Shown here piece after piece: positions 32,006 through 32,764 of a stretch of DNA of 35,549 nucleotides (the stretch's first letter is position 1; every line of letters starts with the position of its first letter). The notes below the pieces were generated by a model. It was not told the origin of the DNA and did no database searches. It worked only from the letters and a program-made list of their open reading frames with translations. Origin of the DNA: Macrostomum lignano (lineage: Eukaryota); contig NIVC01003783.1 in NCBI GenBank assembly GCA_002269645.1, positions 1-35,549 of the forward strand, in the 5' to 3' direction. The position numbers were made by a program, and so were the translations under genes.

Positions 32006-32764
32006 ATGGTATTCTCCAAACTCAGATGTGTGTGCTTTTCAGACATGTCGAACGACCTAAGCCCTAGAGAAGTTAACTTCTCCGCCATCATGGATGACCT
32101 CCTTCGAGACGTGGCGCGAACTATGTCGCCGACTCTTGTCGACCTGATCGGTTACCGGTCCTCAGCTGATTGGGCAGAGTCGCAGGATCCTATGTGTGAC
32201 GCAGGTTCACCGTCTCTGTTTGACGACATTGAGCCGGCTGGCTCGACTGCGAACGACGCCAATGACGATCAGCTTCGCTACAACGCCGAGACGCAGCTCG
32301 GTTCGCCGTCTCTGTTTGACGAAATTGAGCCGGCTGGCTCGACTGCGAACGACGCCAATGACGATCAGCCCGCGGCGCGAGACTACGAGCCGGCTGAGAA
32401 CTTAAAGAAACTGCGCGCGGAGTATAACCGCCTGCCTGACCCGCCAAATCAAACGAATTACGCTTGCGTACGCGTTGTTCGAAAACGGGCGGATCGGCAG
32501 GAGCTGGACCCGCACTGCTGCCCCGACTGTGAGGCATGGTTTTCTAATTTGTCGCCTCGTACAAAGCAGAGACGGCTGCAAGAGCACGGGCGGCACCGCA
32601 GTAACCAGCCTCACCAGAAGCGCGACCCTAACTTTTTAAAAATTGAAATGCCTGACACTCAGCCAGAAGCGCCCTTTGAGGCCATGAGGTTAGGCAAGAG
32701 GCGCATGCGTCCACTGACGGGTGCTAGCGCCGGGCCGTCTAACACACGGGATAAGAAGCTGTAG
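32006..32764 (+). CDS. RBBP8-like: Intact ORF with CtIP/Sae2 C-terminal domain (likely start ATG 32045 or splice acceptor at 32042)
   Basis: 32474-32662 reads VVRKRADRQELDPHCCPDCEAWF...LQEHGRHR...NFLKIEMPDTQ. It aligns without gaps to the recalled human CtIP segment [23 protein letters not shown]...LASCSRHR...NFWEVGFPSTQ (VVRK, CxxC, RHR, NF, PxTQ at identical spacing). Confidence 0.82.
   Translation: MVFSKLRCVCFSDMSNDLSPREVNFSAIMDDLLRDVARTMSPTLVDLIGYRSSADWAESQDPMCDAGSPSLFDDIEPAGSTANDANDDQLRYNAETQLGSPSLFDEIEPAGSTANDANDDQPAARDYEPAENLKKLRAEYNRLPDPPNQTNYACVRVVRKRADRQELDPHCCPDCEAWFSNLSPRTKQRRLQEHGRHRSNQPHQKRDPNFLKIEMPDTQPEAPFEAMRLGKRRMRPLTGASAGPSNTRDKKL
32204..32369 (+). repeat. 96-bp in-frame tandem duplication (1.7 copies)
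   Basis: GSPSLFD(D/E)IEPAGSTANDANDDQ repeated at 32204 and 32300. Confidence 0.95.

What the first reader, a model, noticed from the sequence alone, without database searches (positions are those of the whole stretch)
32006..32764. Intact stand-alone CtIP/Sae2 C-terminal-domain gene amid decayed CACTA and Polinton remnants
Seen: a 252-codon ORF with no stop or frameshift, while almost every neighbouring gene is disrupted. Its last third matches the CtIP C-terminal domain without gaps over 63 residues (VVRK, H-x-CxxC, RHR, NF, P-x-TQ), judged against the human sequence from memory. No CtIP N-terminal coiled coil is present; the N-terminus is acidic and repetitive. Known: this domain co-activates MRE11 endonuclease to process protein-blocked and hairpin DNA ends. 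Inference: it may be a host repair module captured by a mobile element. A CACTA could use it to repair excision sites; a protein-primed Polinton could use it to process terminal-protein-capped ends, or as a dominant-negative shield against MRN. I know of no described transposon-borne CtIP domain. Upstream CCAAT (31639) and TATATAAATA (31844) suggest its own promoter.
Basis: partly seen in the sequence, partly recalled or inferred. Interest (0 to 1): 0.85.

Follow-up and report, generated by a model that had tools for sequence, protein, structure and literature searches.

The report
CtIP-family DNA-repair gene among transposon debris
The open reading frame is a genuine relative of the DNA-repair factor CtIP/Sae2, most likely the animal's own repair gene (or its last exon) sitting in a transposon-rich region, and nothing found here shows that a mobile element captured it.

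Summary
The ORF at 32006-32764 (+, 252 codons) is real. Its residues ~130-238 form a CtIP/Sae2/Ctp1 C-terminal (Sae2-like) domain. A full HMMER scan of 1.8 billion representatives gave 22 hits, every one at the C-terminal end of its target. They include host CtIP/RBBP8 genes of fish, amphioxus, molluscs, a brachiopod and a crinoid. A profile built only from PF08573-annotated proteins scores the ORF 56 bits. The family-invariant R, CxxC and RHR residues are kept.

The closest relative (53% identity over 108 aa) is a Macrostomum lignano gene. It has three exons in 3.3 kb, an N-terminal coiled coil, and ordinary host neighbours in both homeologous loci, with no transposon gene linked to it.

In the window no terminal inverted or long terminal repeat pair encloses the ORF, and there is no second copy. 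No viral contig relative turned up. "CACTA" rests on a motif seen by eye, and "Polinton" is unverified.

No upstream coiled-coil exon was detected, but a control shows the test has almost no power.

Verdict: an ordinary, divergent flatworm-type CtIP family member. Transposon capture is not excluded, because the source genome could not be reached, but nothing supports it.

The parts
32006..32764 (+). Intact 252-codon ORF (stop included) encoding a CtIP/Sae2-family protein. A second in-frame ATG at 32045 would give 239 aa.
32393..32719 (+). Sae2-like C-terminal domain (aa 130-238). It includes the YNRLP pre-motif (aa 140-144), VVRKR (157-161), PNFL (208-211), PDTQ (216-219) and the basic tail KRRMRPL (231-237).
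32519..32530 (+). CxxC motif (C172-P-D-C175). Both cysteines are invariant in the 16-sequence alignment.
32591..32599 (+). RHR motif (R196-H197-R198). H and the last R are invariant and the first R is kept in at least 90% of sequences. In human CtIP the RHR motif contributes to DNA binding (PMC11317151).
32204..32273 (+). Acidic repeat copy 1 (GSPSLFDDIEPAGSTANDANDDQ), carrying an S-P-x-L-F-D-[DE] motif.
32300..32369 (+). Acidic repeat copy 2. It is 97% identical to copy 1 and lies 96 nt (32 codons) downstream, in frame.
32028..32042 (+). Pyrimidine-rich tract ending in CAG, a candidate 3' splice or trans-splice acceptor two bases before the ATG at 32045. Read from the sequence only; not verified.
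   Evidence: (sequence), inference
31844..31853 (+). A second one lies near 31873. Present in the sequence; function untested.
32836..32859 (-). A 24-nt exact inverted copy of part of the acidic repeat (32225-32248), about 70 nt past the stop codon. Origin unexplained.
29779..31008 (+). Neighbour: remnant resembling the C-terminal part of a CACTA/EnSpm-type transposase. The label rests on a motif seen by eye. It carries one in-frame stop, and the N-terminal catalytic part is missing.
   Evidence: no database hit
17772..27442 (+). Neighbour: Gypsy-like LTR retroelement remnant (gag, protease, RT, integrase pieces). The pol region is split by at least six changes of reading frame and interrupted by foreign sequence. 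No LTR pair was found.
35245..35549 (+). Neighbour: retroviral-type integrase core fragment running off the window end, with two stops in the visible part. This is the only candidate for the 'Polinton' claim, and it does not discriminate Polinton from other integrase-bearing elements.

Best explanation
The ORF is coding sequence of the host animal's own CtIP/Sae2/Ctp1-family gene. It is a divergent flatworm-type orthologue of Macrostomum lignano Mlig004387, most likely that gene's large 3'-terminal exon. The transposon fragments around it are neighbours or intron filler, not its carrier.

Inferred mechanism, from what is known of the family (PMC11317151; bioRxiv 10.1101/2023.03.25.534200):
- It docks on RAD50/NBS1 and so switches on the MRE11 endonuclease, which clips protein-blocked or hairpin-capped DNA ends and starts resection for homologous recombination and meiosis.

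Shown here: homology; retention of the invariant R, CxxC and RHR residues and of a TQ site; a shared [FY][DN][RK][LIV]P pre-motif; a shared basic C-terminal tail; and S-P-x-L-F-acidic motifs of the kind found in the central region of long invertebrate CtIPs.

Inferred, not shown: expression, splicing to upstream exons, and the biochemical activity itself.
For: Family membership:
- A full HMMER scan gave 22 hits at E<1e-3, all to ORF residues about 68-239 and all ending at or near the target's C-terminus.
- The hits that could be named are single host genes of Macrostomum, Tubulanus, Lingula, Anneissia, Nucella, Uloborus, Branchiostoma and Eptatretus, plus Mizuhopecten, where a cluster mate of the hit is named 'DNA endonuclease RBBP8'.
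- Hits P0007 and P0021 carry precomputed PF08573. A profile built only from PF08573-annotated proteins scores the ORF 55.9 bits, against 5.7 bits for the next best of 839 window reading-frame segments.
- The invariant columns R, C, C, H, R are all kept.

Host context of the closest relative:
- It shares 53% identity over 108 aa.
- It has three exons in about 3.3 kb, and the last exon holds the domain.
- It has an N-terminal coiled-coil-like region in PAA88737.1.
- Both homeologous loci show the same order: acetyl-CoA synthetase, CtIP-like gene, EMP24.
- The window ORF and this gene share derived traits: HCCPDCEAWF, loss of the W of NFW, no S/T-P before NF, and GKRRxRPL.

Shared motif outside the domain:
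- The SPx[LIVM]F[DEG][DE] motif occurs twice in the ORF and in the central regions of 3 of 22 hits, against 0.016 expected from shuffles.

No transposon boundaries around the ORF.
Against: - No upstream CtIP exon was detected anywhere in the 32 kb upstream. The control shows that N-termini of true CtIPs from different phyla barely find each other (at most 6 bits for P0026), so this test has little power.
- All recognisable transposon remnants upstream are on the same strand as the ORF, which is not what is usual for intron-resident insertions (the expectation is my own knowledge).
- The ORF lies 1 kb downstream of, and in the same orientation as, the CACTA-like remnant.
- Intactness alone is weak evidence of constraint. 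At the break density seen in the neighbours, roughly one per 500 nt, a 759-nt ORF would stay open about one time in five.
- No host gene other than this one is recognisable in the window, and synteny with M. lignano is not seen.
Confidence: 0.55

Rival explanations
1. A stand-alone, host-owned short CtIP gene. The whole protein is the 239-252 aa encoded here, transcribed from the A+T-rich region upstream (TATA-like motifs), possibly with a 5'-UTR intron or spliced leader joined at 32042. Without the tetramerising coiled coil it would bind DNA and MRN as a monomer. It could then act either as a minimal co-activator or as a competitor of a full-length paralogue.
For: - An in-frame stop lies ten codons upstream of the first ATG, and an ATG sits two bases after a good acceptor.
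- No upstream exon was found.
- Structure prediction shows only short helices in the N-terminal half.
- The isolated Sae2-like domain of human CtIP is monomeric yet binds DNA (PMC11317151).
- A 15-aa C-terminal peptide of Ctp1 is reported to stimulate MRN nuclease activity in vitro (cited in bioRxiv 10.1101/2023.03.25.534200).
- Short predicted proteins with this domain exist in the library (P0004, P0007, P0021).
Against: - The closest relative has the canonical coiled coil plus disordered region plus domain layout.
- The exon search has little power.
- The short library proteins come from short contigs and may be partial models.
- The promoter motifs are untested and lie in A+T-rich DNA.
Confidence: 0.2
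2. A partial duplicate or relic of a CtIP gene: a copy of the last exon with some flank, with no function of its own, still open by chance or because it is young.
For: - It is embedded in a stretch where no other host gene is recognisable.
- By the break density of the neighbours, staying open has a chance of roughly 0.2.
- The first 13 codons read like a translated polypyrimidine tract.
- The 97%-identical internal duplication and the 24-nt inverted copy just past the stop point to recent local rearrangement.
Against: - Every family-invariant residue and the C-terminal basic tail are retained at only 53% identity to the nearest relative, which suggests long-term constraint.
- The CpG and G+C content stand out from the flanks, as for a maintained coding exon.
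Confidence: 0.15
3. One reading: the ORF is cargo of a mobile element (a CACTA-type second ORF or a Polinton gene), captured from the host. The element would use it to handle excision sites or protein-capped ends, or to blunt MRN.
For: - It has the same strand as, and lies 1 kb downstream of, a transposase-like remnant.
- An integrase-like fragment lies 2.5 kb downstream.
- The ORF itself has no coiled coil.
- CACTA elements of plants are known to carry second ORFs and captured gene fragments (own knowledge).
Against: - No TIR, LTR or other repeat pair encloses the ORF, and the CACTA pentamer is at chance frequency.
- The transposase-like remnant has no database support and lacks its catalytic half.
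- No polymerase B or capsid gene was recognised.
- There is no relative in IMG/VR and only two close relatives in 1.8 billion representatives. One of them, the M. lignano gene, sits in host synteny with no transposon gene.
- No paper in the searchable library links CtIP with Polintons.
- If the cargo had decayed with its carrier it should be broken too. If it is kept intact by selection, it is working for the host.
Confidence: 0.1

Closest known systems
Macrostomum lignano hypothetical proteins PAA54340.1 / PAA88737.1 (BOX15_Mlig004387g2 / g1)
   Same: - 53% identity over 108 aa of the C-terminal domain.
- Shared HCCPDCEAWF, YN[RK]LP[DE]PP, NF[LF]xIEMP and GKRRxRPL.
- Shared absence of the S/T-P site before NF and of the W of NFW.
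- The domain is encoded in one large last exon.
   Different: - The M. lignano protein is at least 481 aa with an N-terminal coiled-coil-like region and a long S/T/Q-rich middle.
- The window ORF has 130 unrelated N-terminal residues with an acidic 23-aa repeat.
- The TQ site is kept in the window ORF but not in M. lignano.
- M. lignano has C where the window has H three residues before the H of RHR.
- There is no shared synteny.
Metazoan CtIP / RBBP8 (for example the Mizuhopecten 'DNA endonuclease RBBP8' cluster, fish-type P0016/P0020, and the Lingula, Branchiostoma and Anneissia genes)
   Same: - Sae2-like C-terminal domain at the very C-terminus, with VVRK, CxxC, RHR, NF, P-x-TQ and a basic tail.
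- A [FY][DN][RK][LIV]P motif just before the domain in invertebrate members.
- S-P-x-hydrophobic-[FL] acidic motifs in the middle region.
   Different: - Those proteins are 560-1370 aa with an N-terminal tetramerisation coiled coil.
- The CDK-type S/T-P site before NFW, present in 13 of 16 aligned sequences, is missing here.
- The W of NFW is L here.
Fungal Sae2 / Ctp1 (small family members)
   Same: Small size class and the same C-terminal domain family. Modelling of Sae2/Ctp1/CtIP places the domain on the RAD50 surface (bioRxiv 10.1101/2023.03.25.534200).
   Different: They did not appear among the hits at E<1e-3, so the relationship is only through the family profile. They carry an N-terminal oligomerisation domain, which is not seen in this ORF.
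Host gene fragments carried by CACTA, Pack-MULE or Helitron transposons (mainly plants)
   Same: An exon-sized piece of a host gene lies next to transposase-like sequence in the same orientation.
   Different: No element termini enclose it, no other copies are known, and the reading frame is complete to the native stop with all conserved residues. Captured fragments are typically chimeric and degenerate (own knowledge).

Membership tests
CtIP/Sae2/Ctp1 (Pfam PF08573, Sae2-like C-terminal domain) | Significant profile or sequence match to the Sae2-like domain | tested here: met
   - 22 hits at E<1e-3 in 1.8 billion representatives, best 4e-26.
- Hits P0007 and P0021 carry PF08573.
- A surrogate profile made only from PF08573-annotated proteins scores 55.9 bits.
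- Pfam itself could not be run directly.
CtIP/Sae2/Ctp1 (Pfam PF08573, Sae2-like C-terminal domain) | Domain placed at the C-terminal end of the protein | tested here: met
   The domain spans aa 130-238 of 252. All 22 hits align at or near their own C-termini.
CtIP/Sae2/Ctp1 (Pfam PF08573, Sae2-like C-terminal domain) | CxxC motif | tested here: met
   C172-P-D-C175. Both cysteines are invariant in alignment A2.
CtIP/Sae2/Ctp1 (Pfam PF08573, Sae2-like C-terminal domain) | RHR motif (DNA binding in human CtIP, R839; PMC11317151) | tested here: met
   R196-H197-R198. H and the last R are invariant and the first R is kept in at least 90% of sequences.
CtIP/Sae2/Ctp1 (Pfam PF08573, Sae2-like C-terminal domain) | CDK-type S/T-P site just before NFW (human T847; PMC11317151) | tested here: not met
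   The window has K-R-D-P-N-F-L. 13 of 16 aligned sequences have [ST]P at this column. The M. lignano relative also lacks it. This is a regulatory site, not a criterion of homology.
CtIP/Sae2/Ctp1 (Pfam PF08573, Sae2-like C-terminal domain) | ATM/ATR-type TQ site after the NFW block (human T859; PMC11317151) | tested here: met
   PDTQ at aa 216-219 aligns with FPSTQ / FPDTQ of the other sequences.
CtIP/Sae2/Ctp1 (Pfam PF08573, Sae2-like C-terminal domain) | N-terminal oligomerisation coiled coil | tested here: inconclusive
   It is absent from the ORF: predictions show only a short helix at aa 25-39. No match to CtIP N-termini was found in any frame of the window. The positive control shows such N-termini are barely detectable across phyla, so an upstream exon cannot be excluded.
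CtIP/Sae2/Ctp1 (Pfam PF08573, Sae2-like C-terminal domain) | Co-activation of the MRE11 endonuclease within MRN | not testable with these tools
   This is a biochemical property. Here it is only inferred from homology.
Passenger gene of a CACTA/EnSpm transposon | Lies between the element's terminal inverted repeats | tested here: not met
   No inverted repeat pair encloses the ORF, and the CACTA pentamer is at chance frequency. Caveat: the putative element is 5'-truncated, so one terminus may be lost.
Passenger gene of a CACTA/EnSpm transposon | Neighbouring gene is a recognisable CACTA transposase | tested here: inconclusive
   A transposase-like C-terminal motif is seen by eye. There was no hit in the protein database, PHROGs or the exact look-up.
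Passenger gene of a CACTA/EnSpm transposon | Multiple genomic copies sharing flanks; relatives linked to transposase genes elsewhere | tested here: not met
   There is one copy in the window. Both loci of the closest relative lack any transposon gene. Genome-wide copy number in the source species could not be tested.
Polinton/Maverick | Protein-primed DNA polymerase B, retroviral-type integrase, capsid and packaging genes, long TIRs | tested here: not met
   Only a weak integrase-core fragment lies at 35245-35549 (E 0.008 to PFV integrase). No polymerase, capsid or ATPase match was found, and there are no TIRs.

The most novel reading that the evidence does not exclude
The ORF is an independently expressed CtIP half-protein: acidic S-P repeats plus the Sae2-like domain, with no tetramerisation domain. 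It would have arisen by transposon-associated duplication of the last exon of the host gene and be kept by selection as a monomeric modulator of MRN, either activator or competitor, alongside a canonical CtIP elsewhere in the genome.
Probability: 0.1. Interest if true: 0.65.

Novelty: new member of a known kind. Interest (0 to 1): 0.2.

Why it matters
As it stands, this adds one divergent, probably flatworm-type member to a well-known DNA-repair family.

Two modest points of interest:
- The macrostomid-type subgroup (this ORF and M. lignano Mlig004387) has lost the CDK-type S/T-P site that gates CtIP activity in most animals. That bears on how resection is controlled in these regenerating animals.
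- S-P-x-L-F-acidic motifs recur in the middle regions of invertebrate CtIPs and may be an undescribed docking motif.

Only if genome-wide data showed extra copies tied to a mobile element would this become the first transposon-borne CtIP domain.

Tried and rejected
Searches that found nothing:
- Word-index homology searches with the ORF and with the upstream 221-aa ORF.
- PDB sequence searches with the ORF and with the domain profile. There is no CtIP C-terminal chain; the only match was a weak consensus zinc finger at E 0.058.
- NCBIfam and PHROGs on the ORF.
- Rfam, no match.
- Exact-product look-ups for the ORF, its second ATG and two neighbouring ORFs. None is on record, so the source genome and copy number stayed out of reach.
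- IMG/VR scans for relatives of the domain and of the 134-aa downstream ORF.
- The metagenome scan gave one weak, uninformative locus.
- Two literature searches: CtIP with Polinton, and PF08573.

Structure:
- The single-sequence AlphaFold model was poor (pLDDT 41).
- The alignment-based model of the domain reached pLDDT 74 but has no structural neighbour in the PDB.

Upstream exons:
- A search with an HMM of CtIP N-termini and with the M. lignano N-terminus was negative, but the control shows the test lacks power.
- I saw a resemblance between ORF residues 24-47 and the first helix of CtIP N-termini and rejected it, because no search scored it.
- I considered a 34-nt mini-intron (32009-32042) and rejected it, because splicing it out runs into a stop.
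- I considered TAGTG at 31987-31991 as a CACTA 3' end and rejected it as chance.

Full report
**1. The observation**

An in-frame TAA lies ten codons before the first ATG. Its G+C content is about 54%, against 36-39% in the kilobase on either side. Its CpG observed/expected ratio is 1.22, against 0.77-0.84 in the flanks.

The N-terminal half is acidic. It contains an in-frame 96-nt duplication whose 70-nt cores are 97% identical (32204-32273 and 32300-32369). Each core encodes GSPSLFD[DE]IEPAGSTANDANDDQ.

CCAAT at 31639 and TATATAAATA at 31844 are also present, but they sit in A+T-rich DNA and nothing here tests them.

**2. Is it a CtIP/Sae2 domain?**

Yes.
- The word-index search found nothing.
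- The exhaustive HMMER scan of 1.84 billion representatives found 22 proteins at E<1e-3. All matched ORF residues about 68-239, and all matches ended at or within about 50 residues of the target's C-terminus.
- Ten of these were looked up by name. They are single host genes of Macrostomum lignano, Tubulanus, Lingula, Anneissia, Nucella, Uloborus, Branchiostoma, Mizuhopecten and Eptatretus. A cluster mate of the Mizuhopecten hit is named 'DNA endonuclease RBBP8', and the Eptatretus protein is named 'Ctp1 C-terminal domain-containing protein'. One, P0002, comes from an unnamed JGI sample.
- The fish-type hits have the familiar N-terminal coiled coil.
- Two hits carry a precomputed PF08573 assignment and a third carries a faint one.
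- A profile I built only from the five PF08573-annotated proteins scores the ORF 55.9 bits. The next best of all 839 six-frame segments of the window scores 5.7 bits.
- In a 16-sequence alignment of the domain, the invariant columns are one R, the two C of CxxC, and the H and last R of RHR. All are kept in the ORF.
- BLASTP against a fish-type CtIP gives a 71-residue alignment without gaps.
- No solved structure of this domain exists to compare with. The alignment-based model has pLDDT 74 and shows a few short helices in an otherwise extended chain.

**3. What else the protein shares with real CtIPs**

- Just before the domain the ORF has YNRLP. Nine of the 22 hits have [FY][DN][RK][LIV]P at the same place.
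- After the domain it has GKRRMRPL. About half of the aligned sequences have a similar RR-x-[RK]-P-[LY] tail.
- The acidic repeat carries S-P-S-L-F-D-[DE]. The strict pattern SPx[LIVM]F[DEG][DE] also occurs in the central regions of the Lingula, Nucella and Branchiostoma proteins: 3 of 22, against 0.016 expected in shuffles. Looser [DE]SPx[LIM][LF] repeats occur in the Mizuhopecten protein, the Anneissia protein and one further hit, P0017.

So the ORF is not only 'the C-terminal domain'. It also carries a short linear motif typical of the middle of invertebrate CtIPs.

Two departures from the family norm stand out:
- The S/T-P site just before NFW is present in 13 of 16 aligned sequences. It corresponds to the CDK site T847 of human CtIP according to PMC11317151. 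In the ORF it is replaced by R-D-P.
- The W of NFW is L.

The TQ that aligns with the ATM/ATR-type site is kept.

**4. The closest relative decides most of the interpretation**

The best hit (4e-26; 53% identity over 108 aa) is M. lignano PAA54340.1. Its cluster mate PAA88737.1 is 481 aa, partial at the N-terminus.

PAA88737.1 begins with a coiled-coil-like stretch, followed by a long S/T/Q-rich middle and the domain. The same first exon is present in the other locus too.

The gene has three exons in about 3.3 kb. The last exon starts 82 residues before YNKLP and encodes the whole domain.

Both homeologous loci have the same neighbours: an acetyl-CoA synthetase gene upstream and an EMP24 gene downstream. 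Nothing else in that locus resembles anything in the window.

The window ORF and the M. lignano protein share derived features: HCCPDCEAWF, loss of the S/T-P site, loss of the W, and GKRRxRPL. They therefore belong to one lineage-specific branch of host CtIP genes. The window probably comes from a related flatworm, but that is inference, since the source genome could not be identified.

**5. Is the ORF inside a mobile element?**

Nothing found says so.
- No inverted or direct repeat pair encloses it at any seed length tried.
- It has no second copy in the window.
- The pentamer CACTA occurs 62 times against 69 expected.
- The + strand remnant at 29779-31008 does look to me like the C-terminal part of a CACTA/EnSpm-type transposase. 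It has one in-frame stop and lacks the catalytic half. That label is from memory: no database search supported it.
- 'Polinton' rests on a 100-codon integrase-core fragment at the very end of the window (E 0.008 to foamy-virus integrase, two stops). That fragment would fit several kinds of element. No polymerase B, capsid or packaging gene was recognised.
- No relative of the domain was found in IMG/VR, and no paper in the searchable library links CtIP with Polintons.
- A transposon-borne gene family would be expected to leave many relatives in a 15-billion-protein collection. Here only two hits reach E<1e-10, and one of them, the M. lignano gene, lies in host synteny.

**6. Stand-alone gene or last exon?**

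This is open.

For a last exon:
- The relative's exon layout.
- A pyrimidine tract ending in CAG at 32042.
- First 13 codons that read like a translated pyrimidine tract.
- The candidate acceptor lies 127 residues before YNRLP, or 95 without the 32-residue duplication. The corresponding distance in M. lignano is 82.

For a stand-alone gene:
- The ATG two bases after that acceptor.
- The nearby upstream stop.
- TATA-like motifs.
- No CtIP N-terminal match in any frame of the 32 kb upstream.

That negative result is weak. In a positive control, the N-termini of true CtIPs from different phyla score at most about 6 bits against the M. lignano N-terminus, which is indistinguishable from noise among 839 segments.

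One point counts against the intron-filler picture. All recognisable transposon remnants upstream are on the same strand as the ORF.

Intactness by itself is weak evidence of selection. The neighbours carry about one break per 500 nt, so a 759-nt frame would stay open about one time in five.

**7. How it most likely works**

By homology (shown) and by family knowledge (inferred; PMC11317151; bioRxiv 10.1101/2023.03.25.534200), the Sae2-like domain binds DNA through the RHR region and contacts RAD50/NBS1. That activates the MRE11 endonuclease at blocked DNA ends. The acidic S-P repeats would be phosphorylation-dependent docking sites, and the lost S/T-P site implies altered cell-cycle gating in this lineage. 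None of this was, or could be, tested here.

**8. Verdict**

The capture hypothesis is unsupported and is the least likely of the readings.

My estimates:

| Reading | Probability |
|---|---|
| Host CtIP-family gene, the ORF most likely its 3' exon | 0.55 |
| Stand-alone short host gene | 0.20 |
| Relic or partial duplicate | 0.15 |
| Transposon cargo | 0.10 |

This is a new member of a known kind. Interest is low, about 0.2.

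Noticed in passing
window 32836-32859 (and 32225-32248, 32321-32344): A 24-nt piece of the ORF's acidic repeat recurs as an exact inverted copy about 70 nt past the stop codon (blastn E 1e-6 within the window). 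It lies beyond a candidate ATTAAA poly(A) signal near 32790-32800. It may be a trace of a local fold-back rearrangement. Unexplained.
   Followed up: partly
window 32579-32599: Three residues before the H of RHR the ORF has H (EHGRHR) where most homologues have C (xCSRHR). With the CxxC this gives a C-x2-C...[C/H]-x2-H pattern. The domain profile weakly hits a consensus C2H2 zinc finger in the PDB (E 0.058). This may be a zinc-ligand swap.
   Followed up: partly
window 34798-35202 (+): An intact 134-aa ORF whose FTGQG ... YHDKSY spacing reminds me (from memory only) of the parvovirus-type phospholipase A2 motif. It sits directly upstream of the integrase-like fragment. There is no support from PDB, PHROGs, IMG/VR or the exact look-up.
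   Followed up: partly
window 19471-19875 (+): A reading-frame piece with a GIY-YIG-like motif, as in Penelope-like elements, lies inside the Gypsy-like remnant. This suggests nested insertion.
   Followed up: no
window 10312-11010 (+): A tyrosine-recombinase-like C-terminus (PHROG integrase families, E 0.005-0.01), possibly a Crypton- or DIRS-like remnant.
   Followed up: partly
window 12453-12531 (-): A tRNA-Gly(GCC)-like sequence lies inside the G+C-rich LINE-like region, on the opposite strand to the reverse-transcriptase pieces. It may be a tRNA-derived SINE or a true tRNA gene.
   Followed up: no
window 1012-1236 and 6748-6881: A 45-nt tandem array with overlapping copies of 76-93% identity, and a perfect 38-nt inverted repeat with a 58-nt loop (hairpin or MITE-like).
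   Followed up: no
window 12600-31008: Every recognisable transposon coding remnant upstream of the ORF (LINE-like, Gypsy-like, gag-like, CACTA-like) is on the + strand, the same as the ORF.
   Followed up: no
L001 9780-10165: The M. lignano gene model PAA54340.1 omits the coiled-coil-encoding start of exon 1, which is present in the DNA and in the homeologue's model PAA88737.1. The deposited 395-aa model is probably N-terminally mis-called.
   Followed up: partly
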